A DNA stretch of 64,000 nucleotides, taken from IMG/VR virus record IMGVR_UViG_3300017971_000190, positions 157,680 to 221,679 of that record, one strand, 5' to 3'. The stretch's first letter is position 1. Every line of letters starts with the position of its first letter. The notes under the pieces are model-generated. The model ran no database searches and had not been told where the DNA came from. It saw only the letters and a list, made by a program, of their open reading frames with translations. Position numbers and translations under genes: made by a program. Below are positions 29,509-51,771 of the stretch, in pieces.

Positions 29509-32500
29509 TTAAAGTTCTTCGCCTTCGTAACCATGAAGGTAATTTCTTAGTTCATACATATCTTCTTCATCTGCAAAGAAAACAAGAGCTAGCCTACCTG
29601 TGTCTTCATCCAAAGTAATTTCGTAACTTCCAGCTGGGAGTTCGCTGTAACCACTGTTCATAGGCATAACAATATAACGGGTAAGGGCACTTTGTAAATC
29701 TTCTTCACTGGCTTCAGAACCCAACTTTTTACGTAAATCGTAGTGTTTGACTACAGTCCAAAACTCTTCATCACTAGCGTTGGCAGGTAAAATTTCGTCT
29801 ACCTCAAATTCCATAGAGTCAGCTTCGCCTTCATAGGCGTCACTGTAATTGAGGTGGTTAAGTACGTGGCCATCGAAAACAGCTACGTCGTCTTGGAGAT
29901 CGTAACGAGCCATAATCTTCCTCCGTTTGAAAGAGGCTTCCATTTCCCACGGAATAGGTTTAACAGGCTTCTTTTTACGACGACGTTTTCTTTGTTTTAG
30001 AGCTTTATCTGTAACAGGCCACAACGTTTTCTTCTCTAAAGCCAACTCAAAAATATCAGCAATAATTTTGTCGTGAAGATACCATTTATCATTTTTATCA
30101 TAACCTTCTTCCAAACGCTCTTTAGCAAGTCTATTAGACGTATCCTTATTTCGTCTAAGGTCATTAAAATCTCTATGTGCTGCTAACCAAGCAGCTCTTT
30201 CATCTATTTGCTGTTCGGTTAAATCAACAGGCATAATATCGCCATGAGGCATATGAGGTTTATCGTACCAATCAACTGGTCTCTCATTGTCAATTATACG
30301 TGCTTTTTTTCGGAAAGTAGATCCTCTTCTTCCCTTACCAAAAGTATTTACCAAACCTTGACAATCTGCATCAGGAGGACAGTAAAATACCATGACTAGT
30401 CTATTAGCGTCGTCTACAGTAAACTGGTAACGACCACCAAACTCAGCTAGTTCACTGTTGCCTTGATTAAGGGGTGTAGCAATATTGTAGTTTAAGCTGT
30501 TCACGACGAACATGCGAAGTTCTTGAAGGTCTCCGCTACTTCTTAAACTATCGGGAAGTGAGAGTCCCTCTTTCTCGGCCATAATCTCCCACTCATCCCA
30601 AGGGGCATCCCAACTAATAAGCGTATCAAGTACGCAATCGAGATGATCAATAGTAGATTTCCTAGCTTGCTCTCTAAGACACTGTTTGACCATGTCATCA
30701 TAATGGTGAGGTCTAAGGGGCATTGCTTGTCTACGTCGTCCACTACGCCTAACTCTACCTTCTCTACTATGTTCTTTTCTAAACGCCTCAACAGCAAATT
30801 CTAAAGCCTGACCAGCAACCTTGTCACTAAGATCAAAAAGCTGTTCATGCAGTGTAAAGTCACTGGACATGAGAGCTAAAATTTCTTCTCCCTCAATGTC
30901 CATGGCACAAAGTTCATCCCAAGTACCTTCACATTCCCACGTACCAATACCACTACCAGCTTCTTCCCAAACAGCGTAGAGAATACCATCATCTTCATCC
31001 ATAAGGAGATCATAAGCTTCTTCTTTTTGGTCCGGTGTTAAACTGGTGTTGGAAGCCAGATATTTTTTAACAGCTGCTTTCCATTTCTGCACCCAAGCAT
31101 TTTTAAATTGTTCTGTTTCCGCCCAAAGTTCATCGTGTAAATACTCAAAAGCGTGATTTACATAATCACCCCAATCTTGATAAAAAGTGTCTAACATTAC
31201 TTCAAGTTGAGCATCACTTAAAGACTCAACTTGTTTGGGGTAAGTCTCTCTGGCAAATTTTACACCTTCACTGCCTTCCAGTTCTTGACCTTCACTTTCA
31301 ACAACAGTGCTTTCAATTTCTTGCATGAGCCCTTCCATAAGGGTTCTAGCATGATGATAGTAAAGAGCTATTTTACGACGCATTCTTGCTTTCCCTTCCA
31401 ACCTTAATTGTTGTTGACGAGGGTCAACACCTTCGGTGTATTCTTTAACTAGATGCCAAATTGGATGGGAAGGATCAAGGTAATCGTCACCCCAATTTTC
31501 CGCCATTTCCCGGACTATATCTTCGGTAGAGAGGTATTTATCTCTAGATAATTTTTGTATGTTTTTTCTAATATCTTCTTCAGTACCGTGAAAAATAGAA
31601 CCAAATTCTTCTTCAGCCTTTTCTTCTTCCATTTCTTTAATTTTATTTTGCACAGCGTGTTGCGCTAAACTACGTGATGCTTTCATATCTTCTTGAATGC
31701 TTTTCCATTCTTCTTCACCAGCACTAGCAGTCACGTTTTTAATTTCTGGCCAGAGTAAACTTTCTACTTCACCTTTTAACTGACTTTCGTTTACATCTTC
31801 ATGCCAGAGAGAATCTACAATGTCATTCTGATAAGTATCAAAATCACCCCACTCAGAAACTCCACCAATGGCGTCAAAGAAAGCTTGGTCAGCAGCATAA
31901 TCTCCCATATTTTCTATGGCTTGTCTAACTTTGCCTTCTGCTAAACTCCACGGATCTTCCTCATTTCCCACTTTAGAGATTAATTGTGCCAACGTATTTT
32001 CAATCCAATCTTCAACAGTACTTTTAACATCATCTAAGAAGTAGTCAGGACTAGGAGCGCTGTCATAAATGGCACTGCTGTAAACTTCTTTAAGAACGTC
32101 TAGCATGAGTTTAGGGTCATCACTAGCAGGAAGTTCTTCAAGTTCTACTAAACGTAGGAAGTCATCTTTATCTAGAACCTCCATCTCATCAGCATACAGC
32201 TGATGATAAATAGAATTCTGATAATCTTCACCCCAGTAACCCGCTGTTCTCTTAAAAGCAGCCACCAAGGATTTAGCAAAAGCTTGTTTCATTTGAAACA
32301 TTTCGGCACTGACTTTTTTACCTTCCAAATCCCAACTAGCAAGAGCTTTAGTTTCTGGACCACCGTGCTCAATACCTGCCTCAGTGATATAAGCTTTAGC
32401 TGGTACAGGAAGTTCAAACTCATCGAAGTCTTTGCTACTGGCTGGGCGCAAACCAAATTTAGCTAGTTCATCAGCAGTTACATGAGTTTTAGTCGGAATA

Positions 32501-32901
32501 GCATTTTCTGGTGTGAGCAATTCTACCTCAAAAATCTGTCTATCACTATCGTCTACATTGATACTTCTAACGTAGAGGAAGGGATAACGATCTTCAGCAG
32601 CATCAGCGTAGTACCACTTGTTCTTTTCTAAATTAAGTCTGCTAGCGTTTCGCTTTTTAGGTTTCTTAGAGCTGCTTTCTATTTCCTGAAGACAGCTGCA
32701 GCGAGCTACTTTTAAATCATACTTAGTAGCAAAAGCTTCTAATTTAGGCAAGTCTGCTACTTTAACATTATTTAAACCAATAGTAGCTTCGTTAGTAGAA
32801 AAAAGAGAAGCTCCTCTTTCCTGTAACAAAGGTTTGGCTTTTTCTACAGCCCCTGGAGCACCAGTTAAAGTGACAGCCCCATAAAATTGGACTTTACTCA
32901 T
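29509..32901 (-). CDS. very large multi-module acidic protein (putative internal head protein)
   Basis: About 1130 aa; junctions MRRKIA, GRRRQA, FRKKA, KRRKIMA; internal duplicated module; start moved to ATG 32901. Confidence 0.6.
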   Translation of the reverse strand: MSKVQFYGAVTLTGAPGAVEKAKPLLQERGASLFSTNEATIGLNNVKVADLPKLEAFATKYDLKVARCSCLQEIESSSKKPKKRNASRLNLEKNKWYYADAAEDRYPFLYVRSINVDDSDRQIFEVELLTPENAIPTKTHVTADELAKFGLRPASSKDFDEFELPVPAKAYITEAGIEHGGPETKALASWDLEGKKVSAEMFQMKQAFAKSLVAAFKRTAGYWGEDYQNSIYHQLYADEMEVLDKDDFLRLVELEELPASDDPKLMLDVLKEVYSSAIYDSAPSPDYFLDDVKSTVEDWIENTLAQLISKVGNEEDPWSLAEGKVRQAIENMGDYAADQAFFDAIGGVSEWGDFDTYQNDIVDSLWHEDVNESQLKGEVESLLWPEIKNVTASAGEEEWKSIQEDMKASRSLAQHAVQNKIKEMEEEKAEEEFGSIFHGTEEDIRKNIQKLSRDKYLSTEDIVREMAENWGDDYLDPSHPIWHLVKEYTEGVDPRQQQLRLEGKARMRRKIALYYHHARTLMEGLMQEIESTVVESEGQELEGSEGVKFARETYPKQVESLSDAQLEVMLDTFYQDWGDYVNHAFEYLHDELWAETEQFKNAWVQKWKAAVKKYLASNTSLTPDQKEEAYDLLMDEDDGILYAVWEEAGSGIGTWECEGTWDELCAMDIEGEEILALMSSDFTLHEQLFDLSDKVAGQALEFAVEAFRKEHSREGRVRRSGRRRQAMPLRPHHYDDMVKQCLREQARKSTIDHLDCVLDTLISWDAPWDEWEIMAEKEGLSLPDSLRSSGDLQELRMFVVNSLNYNIATPLNQGNSELAEFGGRYQFTVDDANRLVMVFYCPPDADCQGLVNTFGKGRRGSTFRKKARIIDNERPVDWYDKPHMPHGDIMPVDLTEQQIDERAAWLAAHRDFNDLRRNKDTSNRLAKERLEEGYDKNDKWYLHDKIIADIFELALEKKTLWPVTDKALKQRKRRRKKKPVKPIPWEMEASFKRRKIMARYDLQDDVAVFDGHVLNHLNYSDAYEGEADSMEFEVDEILPANASDEEFWTVVKHYDLRKKLGSEASEEDLQSALTRYIVMPMNSGYSELPAGSYEITLDEDTGRLALVFFADEEDMYELRNYLHGYEGEEL

Positions 32902-35542: not shown

Positions 35543-36529
35543 TTAAACGGCTCCATTTGTAGTTGCATCCCAACGGAAAAGCATTATTACACCATTAATC
35601 TCTACTTCGTTGACTGGCTCTTTAACTTTAACTAATTCCATACCCATTTTCCAATGATGACTTACCCATTCTACCAAGTAGGCATCAATTTCAAATATTC
35701 CTCGCGGAGATCCCATCGTAACATTTCTAACTAAGTACATTGGAGGAGGAACAACTCCATAAAGGAGAACTATTCTTCGATCATATTTTCCCCGTTCTTG
35801 CTCCTCTTGATAAACGGTTATTTCTTCAGTTCTTTCATTAACTACCCAAGGGCCTTGACTACTTGGAATTGGACATGCAGCTGTTAAATCAACATCGTAA
35901 TCACCATTTCCATCCATGGGGTAAATTATGTAACCATCTATAATAGTGCAATTACCGGTACCACTTCCATTTGGTGTAACATCAGAACTTCCAAATTTAA
36001 TGTAAACAGAAAAAAAATCTTCTCCGTTAAAATCATCCGTATTTTTCCAATTTATTTCTCCATCATGAACATAGACTGATTCTGCAAATTCCAATTCTAT
36101 AAATTTAGTTCCAGTTTCTGTAGCTGCAAAAGTAATCCTAACAGGAGTACCTTCTCCTCGTTTAAGAGGGTCTAATTGATCCCCTTTTGACGTATACCAA
36201 GTAAAACTGCCACCAGGAGCTGGGGTAGGTACGATTACTTGTTTTCCATCACGATCAATACGAGCCCCATCTATTTTAACATCGGTAGCAGGTGGGGCAA
36301 GAGGTTCTCCACTATGACTGCCAACTATAGTATTTAAAGTGGTTTCATCTTCAGTTGAAAGTGCATCTTTAAACCAAATAGAACATGTGTCTGTTGCCTC
36401 TGCAACATCAATTCGATCTAGTGCTGTTACAATAGTGCTGGCTCTTATTTCTTCTGTTAAGCAGTCAGGAGCCACTTTTCCATTAGGAAAATCCGTACTA
36501 ATTGTATAATTATATTCTGTTGCTGCCAT
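35543..36529 (-). CDS. putative virion structural protein
   Basis: N-terminal YxxSTDFPNGKV domain shared with 36532..37149. Confidence 0.6.
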   Translation of the reverse strand: MAATEYNYTISTDFPNGKVAPDCLTEEIRASTIVTALDRIDVAEATDTCSIWFKDALSTEDETTLNTIVGSHSGEPLAPPATDVKIDGARIDRDGKQVIVPTPAPGGSFTWYTSKGDQLDPLKRGEGTPVRITFAATETGTKFIELEFAESVYVHDGEINWKNTDDFNGEDFFSVYIKFGSSDVTPNGSGTGNCTIIDGYIIYPMDGNGDYDVDLTAACPIPSSQGPWVVNERTEEITVYQEEQERGKYDRRIVLLYGVVPPPMYLVRNVTMGSPRGIFEIDAYLVEWVSHHWKMGMELVKVKEPVNEVEINGVIMLFRWDATTNGAV

Positions 36530-36531
36530 GA

Positions 36532-37149
36532 TTACTCTCCGATTCCCATAATTTCAAGCCTAACACGCCTAATCTTAGAAGCCCCATTTGTTTGCGTAGT
36601 ACAGTAATCTAAGTCAATAAAATGATCTCCAGCGGTTAATGTTACTTTTCCAAATCCGCTACAAGGTCTCCATCCAGCACTAGGACGAAGTTCTTCATCG
36701 ACTTCATAAATAGTAGTTAAATCATTCACTTGAACTCTAGCTTTAAATTGTCCTTGATTAGATCCCATACATTCATAACTGAAACCAACTCGATACGAAC
36801 CTTCTTTAACACTTGAAACATTTAGTCTCAGCTTTTGTTGGAATTCAGTAGACGTAGTAATAGTAGTAGTTTGATCTTCTGCTATAGTATACGCATCTCC
36901 GAATTGTACTGGAGGAGGGAGAGGTTCTCCGCTATGATTAGCAACAATGCTATCTAAATTTATTTGGTCTTCGGAACTTAGATTGTCAGTAAACCAAATA
37001 TCACACGTATCGGCAGTTTTGTTTGTAGTAATATGATTTAATGGAGTAACAATAACACTAGTGTTTATTTCTTTAGTAAGTCGTTCAATATCTACTTTCC
37101 CATTTGGAAAATCTGTGCTAATTGGGTAAGTATATTTAGTTTCAGCCAT
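36532..37149 (-). CDS. putative virion structural protein (two shared domains)
   Basis: N-terminal domain shared with 35543..36529; C-terminal beta domain shared with 37149..37931. Confidence 0.6.
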   Translation of the reverse strand: MAETKYTYPISTDFPNGKVDIERLTKEINTSVIVTPLNHITTNKTADTCDIWFTDNLSSEDQINLDSIVANHSGEPLPPPVQFGDAYTIAEDQTTTITTSTEFQQKLRLNVSSVKEGSYRVGFSYECMGSNQGQFKARVQVNDLTTIYEVDEELRPSAGWRPCSGFGKVTLTAGDHFIDLDYCTTQTNGASKIRRVRLEIMGIGE

Positions 37150-37931
37150 TAGCTAATTCTCCAGAGTTCCAACCTGACGTTCCAAATATAAGATGCCTGA
37201 AGCGCAGAAGAAGACCAAAAATCTAACGTGATATTATGCTCTCCTGCACTTAAAGTTCTGACAGCAAATCCTCCTGTGGGGGAATAATTACTTGTTCCAG
37301 AATTTGTAGGGTACTCACTGTGATCCATTAAATTTGGATCTGTATCATCTAATCTTACTCTAGCTTTAAAAGATTGATTACTAGCGTCTTGTGACCATTC
37401 GTAGTTCCACCCAATTCTATAAACACCAGTAGGTAAAGTTGCAAGAGTTGTTAACGTCAGTACATTGACAGGGGTGGTGCTTGTAGTTCCTAGTCCACCA
37501 AGTTCCTCATCTGTTTGATATTCAGATCCAAATACCACAAAAAAAGGGTAAGGCTCCCAAGTTGCTTGAGACTCGTTCCAAGTAAGCAGGTCTTTATCTG
37601 TGGGTGTAGTTACTGCAACGTTGTTTCCTTGTAGTCTATTTGCATTCCATTGAGCAACATCATTACCTACTTGTTCAGCTGTAACTACATGAGGATTACT
37701 TTGAGAATCTACGTGTCCATCTAATTCTAAGTGGGTATGGGATCCTCTATTTTGAATTAGGGTATGGTCTATTAAATTTTGATTTCCAGAATCTATTAAA
37801 ATATAGGTAGTATCTTGATAATGAATTTTGTATTGACCATCAGTAGTATTAAACCACAGCTGTCCATCTTCAGGTGTAGAAGGATCTGTTGTCAAAAGGT
37901 CGAAATTTAAACCATCACTTTTAATAGGCAT
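37149..37931 (-). CDS. fibre-associated protein
   Basis: DPSTPEDGQLWFNTTDG motif, typical of fibre proteins; shared C-terminal domain. Confidence 0.6.
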   Translation of the reverse strand: MPIKSDGLNFDLLTTDPSTPEDGQLWFNTTDGQYKIHYQDTTYILIDSGNQNLIDHTLIQNRGSHTHLELDGHVDSQSNPHVVTAEQVGNDVAQWNANRLQGNNVAVTTPTDKDLLTWNESQATWEPYPFFVVFGSEYQTDEELGGLGTTSTTPVNVLTLTTLATLPTGVYRIGWNYEWSQDASNQSFKARVRLDDTDPNLMDHSEYPTNSGTSNYSPTGGFAVRTLSAGEHNITLDFWSSSALQASYIWNVRLELWRIS

Positions 37932-41092: not shown

Positions 41093-43858
41093 TTAAACCC
41101 TAACCGGTACATCCGGATCAATTATAATTACACAGCGTTGATTGCCACCATAATTACTAGCATCTAAAATTATTCCTGCTTTAGTTTGAAAATTATTTGA
41201 ATTTTTAATAGGAACGTCGTTTCTAAATTGCCCAGGATTAACCCAACTCAAAATAGCTGGATCTCCAGCAACAGGAGCAGGTACCAAAGCAGCATCAAAT
41301 TGTACTTCTACTTTTCCTGAATTTACTACTTCTCCTATGACAGCATTGTACACACCAACAAAGGTAGCTGATTTAAAAGAACCTGTGGCAGCAGAACAAT
41401 CTGTAGGGGAAATAGTATTATCCGCACTTACATATCCAGCTTGATACTGAACCATAGCAGAAGTATCAAGCCCGTTTATTTTTAACTCTTCATGATAATG
41501 TAAACCGTCAGCATTTGAGCCATCTAAAAGTGTATCCACATTGCTAGAAGTAAAGTTAGGAGTGGTTAATGCAACTCCCCCAATACTAAACCCTGTACCA
41601 CTTGGAACATCTAGCGTCGTAACATTGGTTTGAAGGTCTACTAAAGTAGAAGTGGCGTATATATCACCATTTATGTCTAAACGAGGAATTGAAAAATCCC
41701 CACCAATTAGTGGAGTAGCCGTACTACTATTGGCGATGTATAATTTATTACTTCCAAGTTCATTTTGCCCAGCATTGTGGCCGAGCATAACATTTCCACT
41801 CGCAGCACCAGTTAAACTGAGCCCAGTACTATTACCGATGCAAACATTTTGGCTTCCTGTGAGACCTACTCCAAGATCTCCCAAAGCACTTGACCCGACA
41901 GCTACATTATTATCTCCAGCTGTAGCACCGTAATGAGCACGAACCCCTACAGAAACATTATTTGATCCGGAAATTAAATTAACACTTGCGCTGCGTCCTA
42001 GTGCAGTATTATTAGATCCTCCAGAAGCTGCTTCAAGTGCTTTGTGACCTACAGCCGTGCTACTACTGCTGGCTCCATCTCTAAGAGCATGCCAACCAAC
42101 AGCAGTATTTCGAGTAGTTCCAGTTGTAACTGAACATGTTTCTTCACCTATGGCAACTGTTTCAGCAGTAGAATTACTTCCACTCATAGCATTGTAGCCA
42201 ACAGCTACATTTGAATACCCATTAGTAAGGGCTACTAAAGAATTTTCTCCTACGCCTACATTTGCTCCACCAGTAAGAGTAAAATTACCTGAATTTAATC
42301 CTAAGAAAGTATTGTTGGTGCCGTAAATGTGTAACGCTGGAGTAGTATCAAAAGAAAGAACACCAACAGTAGAAGAAATAGTAATTGGTAAATCAAAACG
42401 ATTGAAATAAATATTGGCCCCCCTATTTAAAGAGGTTCCTATATCCAACCCGGTAACTAAGACATCTGTTTTAATATCTACATAAAGTCCCGCTGGATTA
42501 AGACCAAAAAATTGAGTGTACCCAATTTCGTTTAGATCAGCTACGTCAGTAGGGTTGGTTTTATGTTCAAGCCAAAGAGTTGACGTTGGGCCAATTAAGC
42601 GAGTTCTGAATGCTTCTACGTTACCAGTCCCATCTCCCGCAGCAACAACATGTCCAGCTACTTCTCCAGTTGCACCATTTGCATCGTAGTTAATTACAAA
42701 AGGTTCAGCAGATGTTTGTAGAAGATCTGCATTGATCGTCAATTCACTAGAAGTAAAATCTCCATAAATTAATGGAGGATTGACAGTATTATTTGAAATA
42801 TAAAGTTTGTTACTTCCTACTTCATTTTGACCAGCTCTCCAACCGATAAAGACATTTTCAGATCCAGTAGCATTAATACCAGCTTGATAACCTACTACTG
42901 TATTCTTACTTCCAGTTAGATTATTTTGAAGAGAGTCTGTTCCGATTGCTATATTTTGATCACCACCAGTATGTAATTCGAGAGCACTATTACCAATGGC
43001 AATACAATCTCTAGAAGCTACTGAAGAATAAAATGATCTGTATCCTATTGCAACATTGTCATGACCATTATCATTGGAATAAAGGGCTTCATGGCCAAGT
43101 GCGGTGTTAGCGTCTCCAACTGTAATTTGATAGCCAGCTCTATACCCGACAACAGTATTATTAGCTGCGGTGGTTGTAGCTTTAAGAGTTTCTTTTCCTA
43201 TTGCTGTATTGCCTGAACCGGTGAGAGTTAGATTTCCAGAATCAGATCCTAAAAATAGGTTATTTACCCAGTAAGAGTGTAAAAATCTTTTTGAGTCTAC
43301 AAAAATAATTCCTTCAGGAACCGAGGTAGTAGAAGGTAAATAAATATTTGGACCGGAAATACTACCAGCATCTAAGGCGTCAGCGTAAAGTGTCCCAGCT
43401 CTATTGGCAGGATCTCCTAAATCATACCCTGTGGCATAAAAGTTATTATCAATATTTACAATACCAGTTCCATGTGGATCTAGTGTAATATCCCCATTAT
43501 TAGAAGTGGTAATTGTTTGGCCGTTTATCAGTGTGGTGGTAGCATCAATGCTGAAAGGAATTTCAACACTAAGAGTTCCACCATAAAAACGATGAGCACC
43601 AAAAGCAGGAACTGTAAAAGAACCACCACCCCCTACTTTTAAATCAGCTCCTCCATCAGTTCTTAGTTCTGCACCAACCCCCCATACTTGAAAATCATGT
43701 CCATTTTCTACATACACATCTTTTTGAGTAGGAGAACCTCCAATTGTTAATCGACCAGACTGGGGAGCAATATTGCCAGCAAGAAGAGTATCTGTATCTG
43801 CAATTTCCCCATGAATGCGTTGAATGACATCAAAATATACTGTTCTATAGCTTCCCAC
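41093..43858 (-). CDS. fibre/adhesin with YadA-like beta-roll repeats
   Basis: Many approx. 14-aa repeats NTA(I/V)G..AL....G..N in two arrays; C-terminal cement-like module. Confidence 0.75.
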   Translation of the reverse strand: MGSYRTVYFDVIQRIHGEIADTDTLLAGNIAPQSGRLTIGGSPTQKDVYVENGHDFQVWGVGAELRTDGGADLKVGGGGSFTVPAFGAHRFYGGTLSVEIPFSIDATTTLINGQTITTSNNGDITLDPHGTGIVNIDNNFYATGYDLGDPANRAGTLYADALDAGSISGPNIYLPSTTSVPEGIIFVDSKRFLHSYWVNNLFLGSDSGNLTLTGSGNTAIGKETLKATTTAANNTVVGYRAGYQITVGDANTALGHEALYSNDNGHDNVAIGYRSFYSSVASRDCIAIGNSALELHTGGDQNIAIGTDSLQNNLTGSKNTVVGYQAGINATGSENVFIGWRAGQNEVGSNKLYISNNTVNPPLIYGDFTSSELTINADLLQTSAEPFVINYDANGATGEVAGHVVAAGDGTGNVEAFRTRLIGPTSTLWLEHKTNPTDVADLNEIGYTQFFGLNPAGLYVDIKTDVLVTGLDIGTSLNRGANIYFNRFDLPITISSTVGVLSFDTTPALHIYGTNNTFLGLNSGNFTLTGGANVGVGENSLVALTNGYSNVAVGYNAMSGSNSTAETVAIGEETCSVTTGTTRNTAVGWHALRDGASSSSTAVGHKALEAASGGSNNTALGRSASVNLISGSNNVSVGVRAHYGATAGDNNVAVGSSALGDLGVGLTGSQNVCIGNSTGLSLTGAASGNVMLGHNAGQNELGSNKLYIANSSTATPLIGGDFSIPRLDINGDIYATSTLVDLQTNVTTLDVPSGTGFSIGGVALTTPNFTSSNVDTLLDGSNADGLHYHEELKINGLDTSAMVQYQAGYVSADNTISPTDCSAATGSFKSATFVGVYNAVIGEVVNSGKVEVQFDAALVPAPVAGDPAILSWVNPGQFRNDVPIKNSNNFQTKAGIILDASNYGGNQRCVIIIDPDVPVRV

Positions 43859-43861
43859 GAT

Positions 43862-44617
43862 TTAAGCCTTCTTTAAAGGTAATCCCAATTGTACAACTAA
43901 AATAGATGTAGTCTTAGCATAACCAACTTGCTGAACTACATTCCCGCTAGTATTGGGAGGAGTATTGGTTATGGCACCAGCTGTGGAAGGATCTACATAA
44001 TAGTACAAATCAGCAGTTAAAGCTCCAGCAAAACCGCCTATCTCTCCCGAACGATTAATAATACATGTAGTAGCCGTAGGCTTGGAAATAACAACACCTA
44101 CAGCTGGCATTGTACTTGTAGAATCTGCTTTTGCTTTGTCTACACTGCTAGCACCAGTTTGATATACAACGTCTCTTACGGCTACAGTAGCAGGACAATT
44201 CCATTCTGTTTCTAAAACTTCAATGTCAGGAATAGGATCTACACCCGTAAATACATGAGTAACACCGTGTGGAATAGGTGCTCCACCTGGACCAATTATT
44301 ACTCCATCTGTATCATGAGTAGCATCTCCCCCCGTTTTCATTCTTAAATTATTAGTAGCATCTACCCAAAGATGATAGGTACCTAAACGGAATTTATCAG
44401 GACCGAACCATGCAGAATCATAATGAACAGAAGTAGCATCTAAATCAACAATTTTAATTTGACCATTTCTTAAAAGAATGTCATATCGTTTATCATTTAT
44501 TGTTTTATCATACTCTATATGAGGGAAAGTGCGCGAAGAACGACTTCCCAAAACCCCATTTAAGGGACTGGAAAGTGATATAGCCTGTTGAGTAAGATTA
44601 TCTATTCTTAAGCCCAC
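43862..44617 (-). CDS. structural protein with tailspike-like and capsid-cement-like modules
   Basis: FRLGTYHLWVDATNNLRMK..TDGVIIG and a C-terminal AVGVV..YYVDPSTAG..QQVGYA module. Confidence 0.6.
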   Translation of the reverse strand: MGLRIDNLTQQAISLSSPLNGVLGSRSSRTFPHIEYDKTINDKRYDILLRNGQIKIVDLDATSVHYDSAWFGPDKFRLGTYHLWVDATNNLRMKTGGDATHDTDGVIIGPGGAPIPHGVTHVFTGVDPIPDIEVLETEWNCPATVAVRDVVYQTGASSVDKAKADSTSTMPAVGVVISKPTATTCIINRSGEIGGFAGALTADLYYYVDPSTAGAITNTPPNTSGNVVQQVGYAKTTSILVVQLGLPLKKA

Positions 44618-46369: not shown

Positions 46370-47215
46370 TTAAGCAGAAGGAAATGACAGATTGTAGGTA
46401 GTACACAAACGCTCCAAAGAAGCTCTATCTAATCCTAAACTGGTACTAATAACATTGAAAGATGAAAAGCTCTCTAAACAACAACGAAGAACTTTATTTA
46501 TAGGAAGTCCAAAATCTTGCTCTACTTTTAAAACATGAGGGGGTTTAAAATTGTAGCAATTTGTACTACAGTAAGAAATTCCCTTTTTAGTAACTTTGGA
46601 AGAGAGCCGTTTTTCACAGACAGGGCATACAGAAGAGGACAAAATCCTGTATTGACGATCTACTAAACTTTCTTCCTCAATTTTCTTTTTTAAGGCCGAT
46701 TGTCTTAATTTAAGCAAAGCTCCATTAAGGATCTTTTTCAATTCGTTGGTAGAAATTCCGGTAAGAATTGTTAGCTCATTATAGCTAAGAGAAGTACGTT
46801 TCTTTTTAGTTTGTTTGTTTTCTTCTTCTTCATTCTGTTTTGTAACATAATCTAAAATACAATTATTGCACCAGCTTTTTCCTGGAGTATGGAATAAACA
46901 ACTTTCTAGTCCACATGGCTGGTACATGGTAATATTCAACTCAGGACACTGATAAGAATTTCGGACAAGTAATTTTGGGTGAAAAGTATCACTAAGAAGA
47001 TAAGTATCTTCAAAAATTTCGTTTAAAATGGAAAATAATTCTAGAGAGTTTTCAGAGGGTTGTTTTTCATAAAGTAGTAAAATAGTTTCTAAAAGTCCTG
47101 AACAAGGGCAGCTATCTTCTTCAGGATTACAACAGGGAATGTCTTTTTTAAACATTCCTTCCTCACGTAAAAACTTGACTAGTATCTCGTAAAGGGGTTT
47201 GAAAGCACACGGCAT
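46370..47215 (-). CDS. sigma70 region-4-like HTH protein with Cys clusters (putative transcription regulator)
   Basis: LSYNELTILTGISTNELKKILNGALLKLR; CP..C..C..C cluster; CPVC..YCSTNC. Confidence 0.65.
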   Translation of the reverse strand: MPCAFKPLYEILVKFLREEGMFKKDIPCCNPEEDSCPCSGLLETILLLYEKQPSENSLELFSILNEIFEDTYLLSDTFHPKLLVRNSYQCPELNITMYQPCGLESCLFHTPGKSWCNNCILDYVTKQNEEEENKQTKKKRTSLSYNELTILTGISTNELKKILNGALLKLRQSALKKKIEEESLVDRQYRILSSSVCPVCEKRLSSKVTKKGISYCSTNCYNFKPPHVLKVEQDFGLPINKVLRCCLESFSSFNVISTSLGLDRASLERLCTTYNLSFPSA

Positions 47216-47344
47216 TTTTATTTTGTTCTCCCATCGGAAAAAGAGGTTGTTCTATCTTTGTTTAACAAAGTAGTCTATAAAATAAAGTACCGGTGTTACT
47301 GTTTAAACAGGCGGTTTTGTAAATCAAAGTCCAAGGAGACCAAA

Positions 47345-48346
47345 ATGCAAAACAGAGATTTCCCCTACTTCAGCTGTACTGTTGTCTTTGTAGACGAAAA
47401 AGGAAAAGAGGTAACTCAAACCGATTTCCCCACTCTACAAAAATTCTTTTTAGCTTGGAAGGAAGGAGAATTAAAAAGGAGGGTTAAAATCGTAGAAAAA
47501 GAAGATGGAGTTTTAAACTCCTACTTTAAAAAAGTAGAAAACGATACTAGAGCAGCTTTATTAAGTTTAACATTTAATTTGCAAGAATGTTATGATTGGC
47601 TTAATGTACATTTAGGATTGAGCAATCATATTTTAGCTTATCAGAAAATAGAAATGGGAGCACATGCCCGAGTTAGAATTCCTAAAAATGATTTGGTATT
47701 CTTTGCAGCACCTGGTGATTCCGCAGAATCTGCTGCCAAAGTAGGGTTTGTTTTTGTTCCATCCCTACCCATAGAATTTAATTTTGAAAGAAAACGGGGA
47801 GAGTTTAAGGACAATCCCAAAAAGGTAGTAGAAGAATTTCTAAATGAAATGGTAAAAGAAACTATTGCTAAAGACAATGCTACCGTAGTATTTTTACTCA
47901 AACAGGGGGCACAAGACACGGTGCTTTGCGAACAATTTTCTCCAGCATCTTTTAATACTATTAGGCATAAACTTTGGGAAAAACAAATACCAGCCCCCAC
48001 ACTGCTGACTACTCCAGCGGTATTAGCTTTTATAGTGGAAGAAGCTCAGTGGTTTTATCCAGATAATAAAAGTAATTGGGCAACAGGACAAGTTGGAAAA
48101 TTTGGAGATGTGTCTATTATTTGTGGTGGCTCTGAAAAAGATGAGTTTGGTTGTGGTCTCGATTTTACAGATTACTTCATGTTTGGACCACCCCAAAAAG
48201 TGGGCGTAAGAACTGAAAAAATTCCAATAGAAATAGAATCCATAGACAAGTCTATTTTAGGGGTTTCTTTAATGGGGTGGAGCCTTTATGGATCTCGGGG
48301 CACACTGATATTTGGCAGTGGAATTTCCCACGCCAAAATTGGATAG
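47345..48346 (+). CDS. divergent HK97-fold major-capsid-like protein
   Basis: Only plus-strand gene; AAGGAG SD before ATG 47345; segments such as FVFVPSLPIEFN, TGQVGKFGD and FGPPQKVGV..GWSLYGSRG resemble large-phage MCPs as I recall them. Confidence 0.55.
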   Translation: MQNRDFPYFSCTVVFVDEKGKEVTQTDFPTLQKFFLAWKEGELKRRVKIVEKEDGVLNSYFKKVENDTRAALLSLTFNLQECYDWLNVHLGLSNHILAYQKIEMGAHARVRIPKNDLVFFAAPGDSAESAAKVGFVFVPSLPIEFNFERKRGEFKDNPKKVVEEFLNEMVKETIAKDNATVVFLLKQGAQDTVLCEQFSPASFNTIRHKLWEKQIPAPTLLTTPAVLAFIVEEAQWFYPDNKSNWATGQVGKFGDVSIICGGSEKDEFGCGLDFTDYFMFGPPQKVGVRTEKIPIEIESIDKSILGVSLMGWSLYGSRGTLIFGSGISHAKIG

Positions 48347-48391
48347 TAGTGTATATTTTAGAGGAAGGAGGGGAGAAAGGGAGGGATTGGT

Positions 48392-48886
48392 TTAGAGCTT
48401 AAGATCTAGAAGATTCTTCTTGCTCTTCTTGGCCTTCTTACCCTTCTTTCCACTACCCTTGGGGCGACCACGCTTACCTGTTTTCTTTGCTGCAGCCTTC
48501 TTCTTGGGAGGACGACCACGACGCTTCTTGGGTGCATCATCGGCAGCCTTCTTCTTGGGAGGACGACCACGACGCTTCTTGGGAGCATCATCGGCAGCCT
48601 TCTTCTTGGGAGGACGACCACGACGCTTCTTGGGAGCATCATCGGCAGCCTTCTTCTTGGGAGGACGACCACGACGCTTCTTGGGTGCCTCTCCATCATC
48701 GGGAGCTTCTACCACCTCTTCTACCACCGTACCGTTAATCGGAACGATGTAGGTAGTGGTGTTCTTACGAGACGTCATCTCGACGGTAAGAACGCCAGCG
48801 CGGGCCTTCACAATGGACCCCTTTGTCAGTAGTCCGAACACCTGTGAAGCGGACATGTTAACAAGCTTGGTTTCTGGTTTTGCCAT
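48392..48886 (-). CDS. multi-AT-hook, Lys-rich DNA-binding protein (HMGA/H1-like)
   Basis: 4x KKRRGRPPKKKAADDAP plus KRGRPKGS; start moved to ATG 48886 (AGGAG SD). Confidence 0.8.
   Translation of the reverse strand: MAKPETKLVNMSASQVFGLLTKGSIVKARAGVLTVEMTSRKNTTTYIVPINGTVVEEVVEAPDDGEAPKKRRGRPPKKKAADDAPKKRRGRPPKKKAADDAPKKRRGRPPKKKAADDAPKKRRGRPPKKKAAAKKTGKRGRPKGSGKKGKKAKKSKKNLLDLKL
48492..48690 (-). repeat. 51-bp tandem repeat, about 4 copies
   Basis: Unit gcagccttcttcttgggaggacgaccacgacgcttcttgggXgcatcatcg at 48492, 48543, 48594 and 48645. Confidence 0.95.
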
Positions 48887-48917
48887 TTGATTTCTCCTAT
48901 GATTTGGCATTTGGGAA

Positions 48918-50540
48918 TTACGACAAATCTCGTCGTATACGGACAAATTGATTAAATCTGGCAACTGCTACTGGATCGGGATCTTTTTGAAAGAGGAAAT
49001 CTATTTTCATGCCTACCAACTCTTTCCTCTGCTTCCACAGCTCCATACGCTGATCAGATCCACCTTTATGTTCCAGACCTCCTCCAACTGCAAATTCCTT
49101 ACCGTCGTACCGTACAATAAAACGACGTAATCGGGCACTGTGTCTAAAGGTTACTACGCCTTTGGGGGTGCAATAAACTCTCCGAGCAGATGAGTCTTTA
49201 GCCGCTTTCTTAAGTCTCTGAATAAACGACTCCAGCTCTTCTACTGTATCAAAAGAAGGTCGAACTTGCAAGTAGTATTTTGTCTTTTTTACCTTTCCAA
49301 CCTTTTTCATTATCCTGTAGATTTTATCCGTAATCTCTGGATCTGCTGCTGCGTTCTTCCCCTTCTTCCCAGGCTCCAACCTCACAATGACTCCAGTAGC
49401 CTCTTCCTCTGCCTTAAATTTAATCACATCAGGGCCTCTGTGGTCATCCAAACGAAGCGGGGCATCTACAGTCTTAATCATTGCTCCCTCAAAACTACGG
49501 TCCAGAGCCCTATTGTAGAATTTATGGAGAGCTTCCTCCATTCTAAGAATTTTGTGGCCTAGAATACCTATGTTAGGGCTTCGATAGTACACCTTGGGGG
49601 TGATCTTTAAAGGATTGAGAGCCGCTCCTTCTTGCGAGCAGCCTAAGAGATGATGTTTGCGTTCTTCCCAAGGCATTTCAAAAATACCAGCTTCGTAGGC
49701 TTTAAGAGGTGCCCAATCCCATACTACAGCTCGAACATCATCTAGAAATTCTGCTTCATTGAAGTTCTTATAACTACTCACGATACTAGAAGTTTTATTC
49801 CACGACTTTGCTAGGAATTCTCCATCAATGAAGACATCTTCTTCAGGGCCTACCAAGTCTCTCGCCAAACTAAAAAGCTGTCTAGTAAAGAGTTCGACAT
49901 TTTCAATATGCTTTTTTCGCCGGTTAGCCCTACTGACTATAATTACCTTTTTGACTTTTTGAAAAATAAAAAGAAGGGCTCTTTCTCCGTCTAATTTATA
50001 CTCACCAGCTTTTGGAAATTTTAATGGTTTGTATTTTTTGGGAAGTCTTTTGTAGGCCAACCCCAACATACACCCTCTAAACTGCATAGAGGCATTGTTA
50101 GTACCAGTCTTACCTTCTGTGAGAAAACCTAAACCAAAAACGGATTTAATTGTTTTCGGACCTACTCCTACACGAAGGTCATGGTCTAAAATTCTCAATA
50201 ACCATTTAGCTACTAGAGGGTCACTTTTGAGAAGTAGAGCTTTGGTTTTAGCAGTAGCTTTTTTAGAACCCCAACGACGCTCTTTAAGGTAACTGGCCAG
50301 CTTAACAAATTTAAGCCAAGAGTCATGTGGAGTTATTTCGGAAGTACAACGGGCGGTTTTTATTATAGGATGAACAAAGTACCGATCCTGCCCAAGAGCC
50401 ATTTTAAAAATGGTTTTTAAAACTGGATTGGTTTTTGTTTCTTCCAAAAGGATTTTTTTCTCTTTGTTCTTTTCGTACACCTCCAGCCTTTCCAAACAAT
50501 TAAAGGCTTCCTCAACTTGTGTTTTGGTGGATTTTTTCAT
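48918..50540 (-). CDS. lig: ATP-dependent DNA ligase
   Basis: EYKLDGER adenylation motif, IDGE, EGAMIK, IKFK, OB-fold C-terminus. Confidence 0.92.
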   Translation of the reverse strand: MKKSTKTQVEEAFNCLERLEVYEKNKEKKILLEETKTNPVLKTIFKMALGQDRYFVHPIIKTARCTSEITPHDSWLKFVKLASYLKERRWGSKKATAKTKALLLKSDPLVAKWLLRILDHDLRVGVGPKTIKSVFGLGFLTEGKTGTNNASMQFRGCMLGLAYKRLPKKYKPLKFPKAGEYKLDGERALLFIFQKVKKVIIVSRANRRKKHIENVELFTRQLFSLARDLVGPEEDVFIDGEFLAKSWNKTSSIVSSYKNFNEAEFLDDVRAVVWDWAPLKAYEAGIFEMPWEERKHHLLGCSQEGAALNPLKITPKVYYRSPNIGILGHKILRMEEALHKFYNRALDRSFEGAMIKTVDAPLRLDDHRGPDVIKFKAEEEATGVIVRLEPGKKGKNAAADPEITDKIYRIMKKVGKVKKTKYYLQVRPSFDTVEELESFIQRLKKAAKDSSARRVYCTPKGVVTFRHSARLRRFIVRYDGKEFAVGGGLEHKGGSDQRMELWKQRKELVGMKIDFLFQKDPDPVAVARFNQFVRIRRDLS

Positions 50541-50622: not shown

Positions 50623-51705
50623 CTAGTCGTCTTCCGCCGTCATCTCCACGATTTCGACATTCATGTTTTGACGGAAGTTCTTTAGACGGAATGTACGACG
50701 TTTGCCTCTGTATTTACCTTCGAGAATGGCAATACTAATTTGCCCTTGGTAGGTCTTAAAAATAATACCTTCCAGACGCTCTCCAGTTTTCTCGTCATCC
50801 CACTGCACAGTCATGCCGCCCTTAAGAGGAAGGGCTTTTTGAGACTTCTGTTGACGTTGCCTACGATTAAGAGCACGAATAAGAGGAGTAATATAGAGAA
50901 TTTGATCCTCATGCACAAAGTTTTTCTGAAGCCAACTGAAAGCAGCAGCAAAAAGCTTAACACCTTCTCCAGACTCAGCATCATCTATAATCTTGGTCCG
51001 CATTTCTAACAGTTTGCGGTAAGACGGTAGTAACCTACGCACGGCTTCCCGAGCAGAGAAAGGAAGCTTGTCATTAAAATCTTCAAACGCCTTAGCATTT
51101 TCTACGTTGACGTAGTATTGCCCACAGCTGAAATTATTTTTAATGACTTTGGTTTTAGGATCGTCGGGATCTAGACGTTCCCCCTCTTTGCAGAAGACTT
51201 GTCCCATTATTTCCCGGTTAAACATGGTACATGTACCACAGGTAATCGGAATAACGTCCCCTACTTCATACTCCTTGTCGTCTACCGTAAATCCTTTTTG
51301 TACTTTGTAGACGGGTGTAGTGTCTTTATCTTTAGCTAGTTTCTTTTTGCGACCGCGCTTCTTCTTTTTCTTAGGCTTCTTCTCACGCTCATCTTCATCG
51401 TCATCATCGGAGTCATCATCATCACCATCGTCAGAATCGGAGTCATCGGAGTCATCATCATCACCATCGTCAGAATCGGAGTCATCATCATCGTCATCAT
51501 CGTCGTCGTCATCATCGTCATCATCGTCGTCGTCCTCATCTACAGTATCATCTGAGTCATCGTCATCGTAATCTTCATACTCTTCATCTTCCTCTTCTTC
51601 GTCCTCAGACTCATCCTCCTCCTCGGTCTCTACATCCTCATACTCGTCCTCTTCATGCCGATGGCTTTTGGACTTTGTGCTGTGCTTTTTTCTCTTCTTA
51701 GCCAT
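50623..51705 (-). CDS. basic-acidic-basic protein with Cys4 domain
   Basis: About 90-aa D/E tract, KKKKKRGRKKK, CGTC..C..C; start moved to ATG 51705 (AAGGAG SD). Confidence 0.75.
   Translation of the reverse strand: MAKKRKKHSTKSKSHRHEEDEYEDVETEEEDESEDEEEEDEEYEDYDDDDSDDTVDEDDDDDDDDDDDDDDDDDDSDSDDGDDDDSDDSDSDDGDDDDSDDDDEDEREKKPKKKKKRGRKKKLAKDKDTTPVYKVQKGFTVDDKEYEVGDVIPITCGTCTMFNREIMGQVFCKEGERLDPDDPKTKVIKNNFSCGQYYVNVENAKAFEDFNDKLPFSAREAVRRLLPSYRKLLEMRTKIIDDAESGEGVKLFAAAFSWLQKNFVHEDQILYITPLIRALNRRQRQQKSQKALPLKGGMTVQWDDEKTGERLEGIIFKTYQGQISIAILEGKYRGKRRTFRLKNFRQNMNVEIVEMTAEDD
51390..51650 (-). repeat. Asp/Glu low-complexity tract including a 39-nt duplication
   Basis: ggagtcatcatcatcaccatcgtcagaatcggagtcatc occurs twice. 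Confidence 0.85.
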
Positions 51706-51771
51706 TACGACTCCTTTGAAGAACAATCTGTTCCTGCTGTGATGCCCAAGGGCGTGTAAAGTGTAGCAGCT

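What the first reader, a model, noticed from the sequence alone, without database searches (positions are those of the whole stretch)
47345..48346. Lone antisense-oriented, degenerate major-capsid paralog
Seen: a 333-aa plus-strand gene with a good SD. By eye it follows the segment order of large-phage HK97-fold MCPs (E-loop GDSAESAAKVGFVFVPSLPIEFN; spine helix EMVKETIAKDNATVVFLL; TGQVGKFGD; FGPPQKVGV; terminal GWSLYGSRG..GSGIS) but is strongly diverged and far from the head genes. Inference: a separately regulated vertex or minor capsid protein, a capsid-size modulator, or a decoy for capsid-sensing defences (CapRel-type sensing of MCP is known).
Basis: partly seen in the sequence, partly recalled or inferred. 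Interest (0 to 1): 0.7.

Follow-up and report, generated by a model that had tools for sequence, protein, structure and literature searches.

The report
Orphan capsid-protein paralog in jumbo phage
This lone opposite-strand gene is an intact but fast-evolving copy of the jumbo phage's own HK97-fold major capsid protein, it belongs to a small undescribed clade found only in uncultured relatives, and its position, codon usage and conservation pattern suggest it is no longer a main shell building block.

Summary
Window 47345-48346 (+) encodes a 333-aa protein with a good Shine-Dalgarno site, and it is the only + strand gene in a 92-kb minus-strand arm of a 221.7-kb jumbo-phage contig.

AlphaFold2 gives a confident model (pLDDT 89.6). 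Foldseek matches HK97 gp5, encapsulins and many phage capsid proteins at probability 1.0.

It is not the sole MCP. The canonical MCP lies 58 kb away, outside the window. That protein matches 'major head protein' models (5e-47 and 2e-48), follows the same 'virion structural protein' gene as in phiRSL1 and PaBG, and has strong codon bias. The two are homologous end to end (hhalign E 1.7e-38).

The target belongs to a monophyletic paralog clade. Only 19 relatives of the family were found among 1.84 billion protein representatives, and no full-length second copy was detected in 95 cultured-phage records.

Clade members lie outside head modules in all nine contexts seen. They evolve faster than the MCP and their neighbours, carry more cysteines, are least conserved where MCPs are most conserved, and are split or truncated in two lineages.

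Function is unproven. I favour an accessory capsid-protein mimic acting off the main assembly line (about 0.4) over a gp24-like vertex or minor capsid protein (about 0.3).

The parts
47345..48346 (+). CDS of the 333-aa HK97-fold MCP paralog (stop codon included)
   Evidence: ORF and sequence. AF2 pLDDT 89.6, pTM 0.88. Foldseek HK97, encapsulin and MCP hits at probability 1.0. BLASTP to the genome's MCP E 1e-25. hhalign of the two clades E 1.7e-38.
47333..47339 (+). Shine-Dalgarno AAGGAGA, 5 nt before the ATG
   Evidence: Sequence. AAGGAG is conserved at the same place in relatives L004 and L006.
47216..47344 (.). 129-bp divergent intergenic region shared with the 281-aa gene. Probable bidirectional regulatory region with conserved blocks: TTTAACAAAG at 47261-47270, CGGTGTTA at 47291-47298, and both Shine-Dalgarno sites.
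   Evidence: Three-way alignment with relatives whose proteins are only 31-44% identical. Mean column identity 70%, with invariant blocks.
47315..47325 (+). TTTTGTAAATC, a copy of the genome's most enriched upstream motif (CTTTGTAAAAC class). Candidate phage-specific promoter element about 28 nt before the ATG.
   Evidence: TTGTAAA occurs in 15 of 88 upstream regions, a 5.6-fold excess. TTTGTAAA has 18 of 44 copies in the 11% of the genome that is intergenic. The motif is conserved in L004 but not L006. Function not shown.
47299..47310 (.). Perfect 12-bp palindrome CTGTTTAAACAG. Possible operator.
   Evidence: Sequence. Related k-mers (TAAACAG, TTAAACA) are 4.7-5.9-fold enriched upstream of genes. 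Only weakly conserved in relatives. Speculative.
46370..47215 (-). 281-aa Cys-rich protein with an HTH / sigma-70-region-4-like segment, divergently paired with the target in this sublineage
   Evidence: Ortholog in the same divergent position in L004 (53% identity), L006 (51%) and the split-gene lineage. Feature-based lead to Sigma70_r4/HTH at score 0.79, which is only a lead. In G001 its homolog (34%) lies about 28 kb from the paralog.
48347..48391 (.). 45-bp convergent gap between the target's stop and the stop of the AT-hook-like gene. No intrinsic terminator predicted inside it.
   Evidence: Terminator scan found none in the gap, and the count was at chance level. Minus-strand read-through across the target is therefore possible (inference).
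48392..48910 (-). Conserved downstream neighbour: a basic AT-hook-like repeat protein (172 aa as called), followed by the ATP-dependent DNA ligase at 48918-50540
   Evidence: Same order in L004 and the split-gene lineage. 51-nt x 3.8 tandem repeat. Ligase Pfam hits.

Best explanation
SHOWN.
- The gene encodes an intact HK97-fold protein that is a full-length paralog of this jumbo phage's own major capsid protein.
- It belongs to a monophyletic, previously unannotated 'paralog clade' found only in uncultured relatives of the phiRSL1 / PaBG / Motura jumbo myophages.
- It has its own ribosome-binding site and a conserved upstream region, and it lies on the opposite strand at the junction of the replication and tail-fibre modules.
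- It has ordinary codon usage, while the real MCP is strongly codon-biased.

INFERRED (my commitment).
- It is an accessory protein made at modest levels outside the head-gene programme. It is not a building block of the shell.
- It keeps the capsid-protein body, but constraint has relaxed on the N-arm helix and E-loop (the lattice contacts).
- New constraint has appeared on an N-terminal segment that corresponds to part of the propeptide removed from the canonical MCP.
- I propose it works as a capsid-protein mimic in conflict. It would bind factors that recognise the MCP fold, either host capsid-sensing immunity (a non-activating decoy) or the assembly machinery of rival phages or satellites.
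- Its rapid sequence turnover would reflect that arms race.
For: Fold and paralogy.

A separate canonical MCP:
- phrog_2522 at 5e-47 and NF042927 at 2e-48;
- the same 'virion structural protein then MCP' order as in phiRSL1, PaBG, Lu11, BcepSauron, Motura and others.

Clade structure: the paralog clade is monophyletic at 100/100. It attaches next to the uncultured-type MCPs, outside the clade of eight cultured-phage MCPs.

Not needed by the family in general: tblastn of the canonical MCP against 95 cultured-phage records found a single full-length copy in each. Profile searches of two of them (Motura, RHEph12) found nothing more than one 127-aa fragment.

Context: nine of nine contexts lie outside head modules. 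In distant lineages the gene sits inside arrays of small accessory genes, next to NAD salvage, RNA-repair, nuclease, HNH and faint PARP-like genes.

Rate:
- G000 versus G001 identities are TerL 48%, portal 47%, MCP 50% and paralog 27%;
- in L004 the neighbours are 53-82% identical and the paralog 43%;
- between L010 and L014 the flanking genes are 52-96% identical and the paralog 46%.

Dispensability: a frame-split ortholog occurs in at least 3 samples, and G002 carries an N-terminally truncated copy.

Composition: 3-8 cysteines per paralog (one invariant) against 0-2 in canonical MCPs. The constraint pattern is also shifted.

Expression proxy: MCP GC3 0.54 (rank 4 of 185), target 0.27 (rank 101).

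Literature: the PaBG MCP loses about 20% of its mass on maturation (PMC7412058). Direct sensing of an MCP by CapRel is established (PMC9712102).
Against: - No expression, virion-proteome or binding data exist, and no RNA run was listed.
- All MCP paralogs of known function that I am aware of (T4 gp24, SaPIbov5 Ccm) are built into capsids. An off-virion capsid mimic therefore has no precedent, and literature searches found none.
- The whole HK97 architecture, E-loop included, is retained, as expected for an assembling protein.
- Virion genes of jumbo phages can be scattered, so genomic context is weak evidence.
- T4-like phages also lose gp24 in some lineages (my own knowledge), so loss is not decisive.
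- The rate comparison between G000 and G001 assumes that the target and P0006 are orthologs.
- The complex prediction gave no answer.
Confidence: 0.4

Rival explanations
1. Specialised minor capsid protein. This would be a gp24-like vertex (penton) protein, or a capsomer at a special position. It would be produced in small amounts and co-assembled with hexamers of the canonical MCP.
For: - It is a full-length MCP paralog with every HK97 element retained, including the E-loop, and collinear with the MCP model.
- Median codon usage fits a low-copy virion protein.
- Known MCP paralogs are capsid components: T4 gp24, and SaPIbov5 Ccm, a capsid-protein homolog that redirects helper capsid assembly (PMC8569155).
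- Duplication of structural genes occurs in this phage group, which has two sheath genes in PaBG-like phages (PMC7412058).
- In G000 the gene abuts the start of the structural block.
Against: - It is never adjacent to or co-oriented with head genes in nine contexts.
- No full-length second copy was detected in the 95 cultured-phage records of the family, which build their large capsids with one MCP gene.
- One complete genome has two different full-length paralogs plus a fragment gene.
- It is split or truncated in two lineages.
- The lattice-contact regions are the least conserved parts.
- It carries 3-8 cysteines, against 0-2 in MCPs.
- It evolves about three times faster than the MCP on the tree.
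Confidence: 0.3
2. Modulator of the phage's own capsid assembly, such as a size or shape determinant or a nucleator. It would act transiently on MCP assembly without being a stable virion component.
For: MCP homologs can redirect capsid size and shape (Ccm, PMC8569155). The protein keeps the MCP body but has a changed N-terminal, propeptide-equivalent region (PMC7412058).
Against: An assembly factor would be expected to be regulated with the head genes and to be conserved wherever this MCP family builds large capsids. It was not detected in the cultured relatives and is broken in some lineages. There is no conserved partner.
Confidence: 0.1
3. Self-assembling intracellular shell. This would be an encapsulin-like compartment made in the infected cell to sequester a cargo.
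For: Encapsulins are among the best structural matches. The higher cysteine content suits a cytoplasmic protein.
Against: No neighbour is conserved across subclades that could serve as cargo or scaffold. There is no encapsulin family hit. The best structural match is its own family's MCP (Motura, TM 0.73).
Confidence: 0.07
4. Functionless duplicate drifting towards loss.
For: Very fast divergence, no family-model hits, and split or truncated copies in two lineages.
Against: - Intact frames persist across lineages whose core proteins are only about 48-50% identical.
- The clade has 13 invariant and 8 near-invariant positions.
- The fold prediction is confident.
- The upstream regulatory blocks and Shine-Dalgarno site are conserved.
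- Both halves of the split copy are still 51-53% identical with no further disruption.
Confidence: 0.07

Closest known systems
Canonical HK97-fold MCP of phiRSL1 / PaBG / Lu11 / Motura-type jumbo myophages (phrog_2522; NCBIfam NF042927 capsid_Caudo_2)
   Same: Same fold and homologous end to end (hhalign E 1.7e-38). The best structural match is the Motura MCP at TM 0.73. The AF2 model is collinear with that of the genome's own MCP.
   Different: - Only 23-27% identical to the genome's MCP.
- Fails both family HMMs.
- Lacks the first ~34 residues.
- Has 'C.GS..D' where MCPs have 'TDGFRY'.
- Not preceded by the 'virion structural protein' gene.
- Lies outside the head module, has no codon bias and is cysteine-rich.
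T4 gp24 vertex protein (paralog of gp23)
   Same: A diverged paralog of the MCP kept alongside it in a large myophage. It would be needed in far fewer copies than the MCP.
   Different: gp24 is encoded next to gp23 and expressed with it (my own knowledge). This gene is 58 kb from the MCP, on the other strand, with its own regulatory region. Pentamer formation could not be tested here.
SaPIbov5 Ccm (capsid-protein homolog that redirects helper-phage capsid assembly; PMC8569155)
   Same: A capsid-protein homolog encoded away from the main capsid gene and used for something other than building the standard shell.
   Different: Ccm belongs to a satellite that parasitises a helper phage. This gene is part of the phage genome itself, in conserved synteny. 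There is no sign of a satellite: no integrase or packaging genes lie nearby.
Encapsulin shell proteins
   Same: HK97 fold of similar size, with Foldseek probability 1.0.
   Different: No encapsulin Pfam hit, no conserved cargo neighbour, and clear descent from a phage MCP.
MCP as trigger of bacterial immunity (CapRel SJ46; PMC9712102)
   Same: This only shows that the HK97 MCP is a molecule that host defences sense directly. That is what makes a mimic conceivable.
   Different: No phage-encoded MCP decoy has been described. Nothing here shows binding to any sensor.

Membership tests
HK97-fold capsid protein superfamily | HK97 fold: N-arm, E-loop, spine helix with P-domain, and A-domain | tested here: met
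   AF2 pLDDT 89.6 and pTM 0.88. HK97 gp5 at E 4e-9 and 306 PDB matches with E at or below 0.001, the 50 listed all capsid or encapsulin chains at probability 1.0. BFVD and Atlas MCP matches with TM up to 0.73.
phiRSL1/PaBG-type major capsid protein family (phrog_2522 / NF042927) | Significant sequence homology to family members | tested here: met
   phmmer E 5.9e-16 to a canonical-type protein in a library of 1.84 billion. BLASTP 1e-25 to the genome's MCP. hhalign E 1.7e-38 over 335 columns.
phiRSL1/PaBG-type major capsid protein family (phrog_2522 / NF042927) | Reaches the curated family models | tested here: not met
   No PHROG hit at E up to 10 and no NCBIfam hit. The genome's canonical MCP scores 5e-47 and 2e-48.
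phiRSL1/PaBG-type major capsid protein family (phrog_2522 / NF042927) | Position in the head module, directly after the 'virion structural protein' gene | tested here: not met
   All cultured relatives examined and G000's canonical MCP have this order. The target's neighbours are unrelated to that protein.
phiRSL1/PaBG-type major capsid protein family (phrog_2522 / NF042927) | Being the abundant shell protein of the virion | not testable with these tools
   Only a proxy is available: codon bias is extreme for the MCP (GC3 0.54, rank 4 of 185) and median for the target (0.27, rank 101).
gp24-like vertex (penton) paralog | Paralog of the phage's MCP | tested here: met
gp24-like vertex (penton) paralog | Encoded and regulated with the MCP and head genes | tested here: not met
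   It lies 58 kb from the MCP on the opposite strand, with its own conserved upstream region. Nine of nine contexts are outside head modules.
gp24-like vertex (penton) paralog | Forms pentamers at capsid vertices | not testable with these tools
The MCP plus target heterodimer run gave no answer.
Encapsulin | Encapsulin family signature and an adjacent cargo with a targeting peptide | tested here: not met
   No Pfam encapsulin hit. No neighbour is conserved across subclades.
Satellite-encoded capsid redirector (Ccm-like) | Encoded by a mobile satellite distinct from the phage | tested here: not met
   The gene sits in conserved phage synteny between the tail-fibre and replication modules in four related lineages. 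Its base composition and codon usage are typical of the genome.

The most novel reading that the evidence does not exclude
Jumbo phages of this uncultured clade keep one or two re-purposed copies of their capsid protein that never enter the virion. These copies would be transcribed apart from the head genes. They would act as capsid mimics, either soaking up host sensors that detect the HK97 capsid protein or poisoning capsid assembly of rival phages and satellites. That would be the first off-virion use of a major capsid protein by a phage.
Probability: 0.3. Interest if true: 0.85.

Novelty: new variant of a known kind. Interest (0 to 1): 0.55.

Why it matters
MCP paralogs are known mainly as vertex proteins encoded beside the MCP. 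This case differs in several ways:
- It is a conserved but very rare clade, with only 19 relatives of the family found among 1.84 billion protein representatives.
- It is dispersed in the genome and regulated on its own.
- It evolves faster than the MCP and its neighbours.
- It appears to be dispensable in some lineages.

If it is a vertex or minor capsid protein, it shows how capsids of this jumbo-phage lineage can diversify their building blocks. If it acts off the virion, it would add a new class of counter-defence or inter-phage weapon derived from a structural protein. That would be relevant to how capsid-sensing immunity is evaded.

Either way, it gives annotators a name for an orphan family.

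Tried and rejected
- **Family scans of the target.** Pfam, PHROGs and NCBIfam gave nothing, apart from a chance Dcp2 fragment.
- **Word-index protein search.** It found only the protein itself. The profile version added only canonical MCPs.
- **Megablast of 20 kb against phages.** No match.
- **Complex prediction, MCP plus target.** Score 0.00 and 'no answer', so it is not used as evidence either way.
- **RNA runs.** None was listed, and the only holders were DNA runs. I did not use read laying, because Logan contigs of DNA runs cannot show expression.
- **Near-identical contigs L021 and L022.** One synonymous difference in 21 kb, so no selection signal.
- **Duplicated two-gene cassette.** The 268-aa gene near the target is unrelated to the MCP's 268-aa partner, so this idea is rejected.
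- **Conserved cargo or partner across subclades.** None found.
- **Sigma-70-type promoter and terminator scan around the gene.** Counts were at chance level.
- **Using strong sigma-70-like promoters to label the + arm as 'early'.** Only 3 such sites in the + arm against 1 in the minus arm, which is too few to use.
- **Rfam scan of 45-50 kb.** Nothing found.
- **Recent horizontal import.** Rejected, because GC, GC3 and codon usage are typical of the genome.
- **DNA of the split ortholog.** Not retrievable, so the nature of the frameshift site is unknown.

Full report
**1. The observation**

Window 47345-48346 (+) is an open frame of 333 codons that starts at an ATG, with AAGGAGA five bases upstream. 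The mechanical ORF list extends it to a TTG at 47258. However, orthologs from other contigs align from the same methionine, so 47345 is the start.

It is the only + strand ORF of at least 120 aa in the window. The window is the last 64 kb of a single 221,679-bp contig with 39% GC. That contig is a virus record estimated to be about 63% complete.

The genome has two arms. Genes run on the + strand up to about 129 kb and on the minus strand from there to the end. The target is a single + gene between runs of 40 and 17 minus-strand genes.

**2. Surroundings**

Upstream in the minus-strand direction lies a replication block:
- an N6/N4 methyltransferase;
- a clamp-loader-like ATPase;
- an SbcC-like ATPase;
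- an ATP-dependent DNA ligase at 48918-50540;
- a basic AT-hook-like repeat protein.

Downstream lie these genes:
- a 281-aa Cys-rich protein;
- two proteins with no match;
- a capsule-depolymerase-domain protein;
- a tail-spike-like protein at 41093-43858;
- further on, the large terminase at 23454-25784 and the portal at 20606-22924.

The gene therefore sits at a module junction. It is about 22 kb from the terminase and about 58 kb from the canonical capsid gene.

**3. Fold**

With a 21-sequence family alignment, AlphaFold2 gives mean pLDDT 89.6 and pTM 0.88.

- Foldseek against the PDB returns HK97 gp5 (E 4e-9). It also returns encapsulins and dozens of phage capsid proteins at probability 1.0.
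- Against viral models, the best hits are the Achromobacter phage Motura MCP (TM 0.73) and Bacillus phage G gp27.
- ESM Atlas neighbours are all MCP families.

The 'spine helix' string lies in helix 158-188, and the 'E-loop' string covers the second E-loop strand and the next P-domain strand.

**4. It is a paralog, not the MCP**

An all-against-all comparison of the genome's proteins links the target to a 379-aa protein at G000:C1:146172-147311 (minus strand, outside the window). The match is 27% identity over 232 aa with E 1e-25.

That protein is the canonical MCP:
- It matches phrog_2522 'major head protein' at 5e-47.
- It matches the NCBIfam equivalog 'HK97-fold major capsid protein' at 2e-48.
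- It directly follows a 'virion structural protein' gene, as in RHEph12, Motura, phiRSL1, PaBG, Lu11, BcepSauron, pEa_SNUABM_1 and JA11.

The target reaches none of these family models.

A profile-profile comparison of the two clades gives 100% probability and E 1.7e-38 over 335 columns. Paralog positions 8-350 align with MCP positions 35-375. The AF2 model of the MCP (pLDDT 82.5) is collinear with the target's. It has an extra low-confidence N-terminal extension and two extra short A-domain helices.

Only the capsid gene was duplicated. The proteins near the target are unrelated to the MCP's 268-aa partner.

**5. A small, distinct clade**

An exhaustive HMMER scan of 1.84 billion representatives finds only 19 relatives. 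They split into canonical MCP-type proteins and a 'paralog clade'.

The paralog clade has its own signature. Invariant positions are F15, W38, G41, R45, L90, L92, D177, N178, C260, G262, G287, R289 and G311. It has 'C.GS..D' where MCPs have 'TDGFRY'.

Maximum-likelihood trees give 100/100 support for the split. Inside the paralog clade there are three subgroups. The clade attaches at the unresolved node shared with the uncultured-type MCPs. That node lies outside a well-supported clade holding the MCPs of all eight cultured phages sampled. The simplest reading is a duplication in the uncultured lineage followed by accelerated change. The root is not established.

A complete 350-kb relative (G001, with terminal repeats) carries the canonical MCP, two different full-length paralog-clade genes, and an MCP-fragment gene.

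tblastn of the canonical MCP against the phage collection matched 95 records. Only the two Motura records showed a second matching place, and it is a 127-aa fragment. Profile searches of Motura and RHEph12 found no other copy.

**6. Context and regulation**

In three close lineages (L004, L006 and a lineage with a split gene) the ortholog is again a lone opposite-strand gene. It lies between the 281-aa gene and the AT-hook and ligase genes.

The 129-bp divergent intergenic region keeps conserved blocks even though the proteins are only 31-44% identical.

One block, TTTTGTAAATC at 47315-47325, is a copy of the most enriched upstream motif in the genome. TTGTAAA occurs in 15 of 88 upstream regions, a 5.6-fold excess. 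This suggests a phage-specific promoter, but the temporal class cannot be read from sequence.

The divergent 281-aa partner shows only lead-level similarity to sigma-70 region 4 / HTH proteins. Group 2 jumbo phages, which include phiRSL1, PaBG, Lu11 and Motura, are reported to rely on phage sigma factors (PMC7824862, PMC7412058).

In six more distant contexts, the paralog-clade gene sits inside co-oriented arrays of small, mostly unknown genes. Its neighbours there include NAD synthase and NAPRTase, an RNA 2'-phosphotransferase, an RNA-ligase-like protein, nucleases, HNH, a faint PARP-like hit and an RF-1-like protein. Head genes are never nearby.

No neighbour is conserved across subclades. 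No RNA run was listed for the locus.

**7. Evolutionary behaviour**

Identity between G000 and G001:

| Protein | Identity |
|---|---|
| Large terminase | 48% |
| Portal | 47% |
| Canonical MCP | 50% |
| 281-aa protein | 34% |
| Paralog (target vs P0006) | 27% |

- In L004 the neighbours are 53-82% identical and the paralog 43%.
- Between L010 and L014 the flanking genes are 52-96% identical and the paralog 46%.
- On the tree, the G000-G001 path is about 0.85-0.9 for the MCP and about 2.8 for the paralogs.

The gene is nonetheless intact across this depth, with invariant residues, so it is under selection.

It is also dispensable in places:
- In one lineage, seen in at least three samples, the ortholog is split into 152-aa and 202-aa ORFs by a single frame change at about residue 153. 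Both halves are still 51-53% identical to the target.
- In G002 only the C-terminal half of a P0017-like copy remains.

**8. Shifted constraints**

- Paralog-clade proteins have 3-8 cysteines, one of them invariant. Canonical MCPs have 0-2.
- Canonical MCPs are most conserved in the N-arm helix and E-loop region (0.69-0.75 over target positions ~76-120). There the paralogs are at or near their lowest (0.42-0.53).
- Relative to the MCPs, the paralogs are more constrained only at residues ~31-60.
- The PaBG MCP loses about 20% of its mass on maturation (PMC7412058). By alignment, the paralog's first ~45 residues correspond to part of that removed region. Four of its invariant residues lie there.
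- The MCP and its partner gene are among the most codon-biased genes (GC3 0.54 and 0.45, ranks 4 and 8 of 185). The target is at the median (0.27, rank 101). Its composition is otherwise typical of the genome, which argues against recent import.

**9. Interpretation**

Identity is settled. This is an intact, separately regulated, fast-evolving HK97-fold paralog of the phage's MCP, and a member of an undescribed clade. Function is not settled.

I favour an accessory role off the main assembly line: a capsid-protein mimic used in host-phage or phage-phage conflict (about 0.4). The reasons are:
- consistently non-structural context;
- fast turnover relative to neighbours;
- cysteine content;
- relaxed lattice-contact regions;
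- patchy loss;
- more than one paralog in a genome;
- no full-length second copy detected in the cultured relatives.

The main rival is a gp24-like vertex or minor capsid protein (about 0.3). It has the better precedent, and it fits the fully retained HK97 architecture and the low-expression codon profile.

Less likely alternatives are a transient modulator of the phage's own capsid assembly (0.1), an encapsulin-like shell (0.07) and a decaying duplicate (0.07).

The complex prediction gave no answer and is not used.

**10. Novelty and verdict**

I found no description of full-length MCP paralogs in this phage group, or of any phage-encoded capsid decoy.

This is a new variant of a known kind (MCP paralogs). 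It is interesting mainly because its features do not fit the known vertex-protein pattern. The word 'degenerate' and the functional alternatives remain the open parts.

Noticed in passing
G000:C1:65763-66479 (+), outside the window (L003:5763-6479); also G001 L015:1273-2109 and Motura L026:1468-1851: Short MCP-fragment genes of 238, 278 and 127 aa. They match only the A-domain part of the canonical MCP and keep its 'TD.(F/L)RYDTLR' motif. They form a third kind of capsid-derived gene in these jumbo phages, and one is present in a cultured phage (Motura).
   Followed up: partly
window 48392-48964 (-), repeat at 48492-48685: Basic AT-hook-like protein built from a 51-nt tandem repeat (3.8 copies encoding KKRRGRPPKKKAADDAP). 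An otherwise identical contig (L021) has two fewer copies.
   Followed up: partly
window 50623-51726 (-): 367-aa protein with a very long Asp/Glu/Ser-rich acidic tract. It has irregular 9-39-nt repeats, no family match and elevated GC3.
   Followed up: no
genome-wide; examples at G000:C1:90335, 112751, 116428, 177858 (window 20179) and 186065 (window 28386): The motif CTTTGTAAAAC, often preceded by a C/T-rich tract, is the most enriched element upstream of genes after the Shine-Dalgarno sequence. It is a candidate phage-specific promoter class on both arms.
   Followed up: partly
G000:C1:146172-148148 (-), outside the window: The canonical MCP and the preceding virion structural protein have strikingly high GC3 (0.54 and 0.45, against a genome mean of 0.29). 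A few non-structural genes are even higher, at 15402-16031 and 114554-115591 (0.76 and 0.72).
   Followed up: partly
G000:C1:90431-92002 (+), outside the window; G001:C1:256635-257318: A 523-aa protein is about 25% identical to part of the large terminase (window 23454-25784). A similar second terminase-like gene exists in G001, so the packaging ATPase/nuclease also has a paralog in this clade.
   Followed up: no
window 35543-37931 (-): Three adjacent genes of 328, 205 and 260 aa share sequence modules. The first two share 59% identity over their first 80 residues, and the second and third share 36% over 136 residues. They look like a tail-fibre cassette with swapped distal parts.
   Followed up: no
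contigs carrying P0005 and P0003 (ENA ERZ23498358, ERZ23498365; Logan SRR10072857, SRR10072858): The target's ortholog is split by a single frame change at about residue 153, with a 62-nt overlap of the two ORFs. The DNA could not be fetched, so a pseudogene and a programmed frameshift cannot be told apart.
   Followed up: partly
window 43862-44617 (-) and G000:C1:28454-29572, 30109-32604: The 251-aa capsule-depolymerase-domain protein shares its C-terminal part (31-32% identity) with two + arm proteins. Receptor-binding or depolymerase modules are therefore present on both arms.
   Followed up: no
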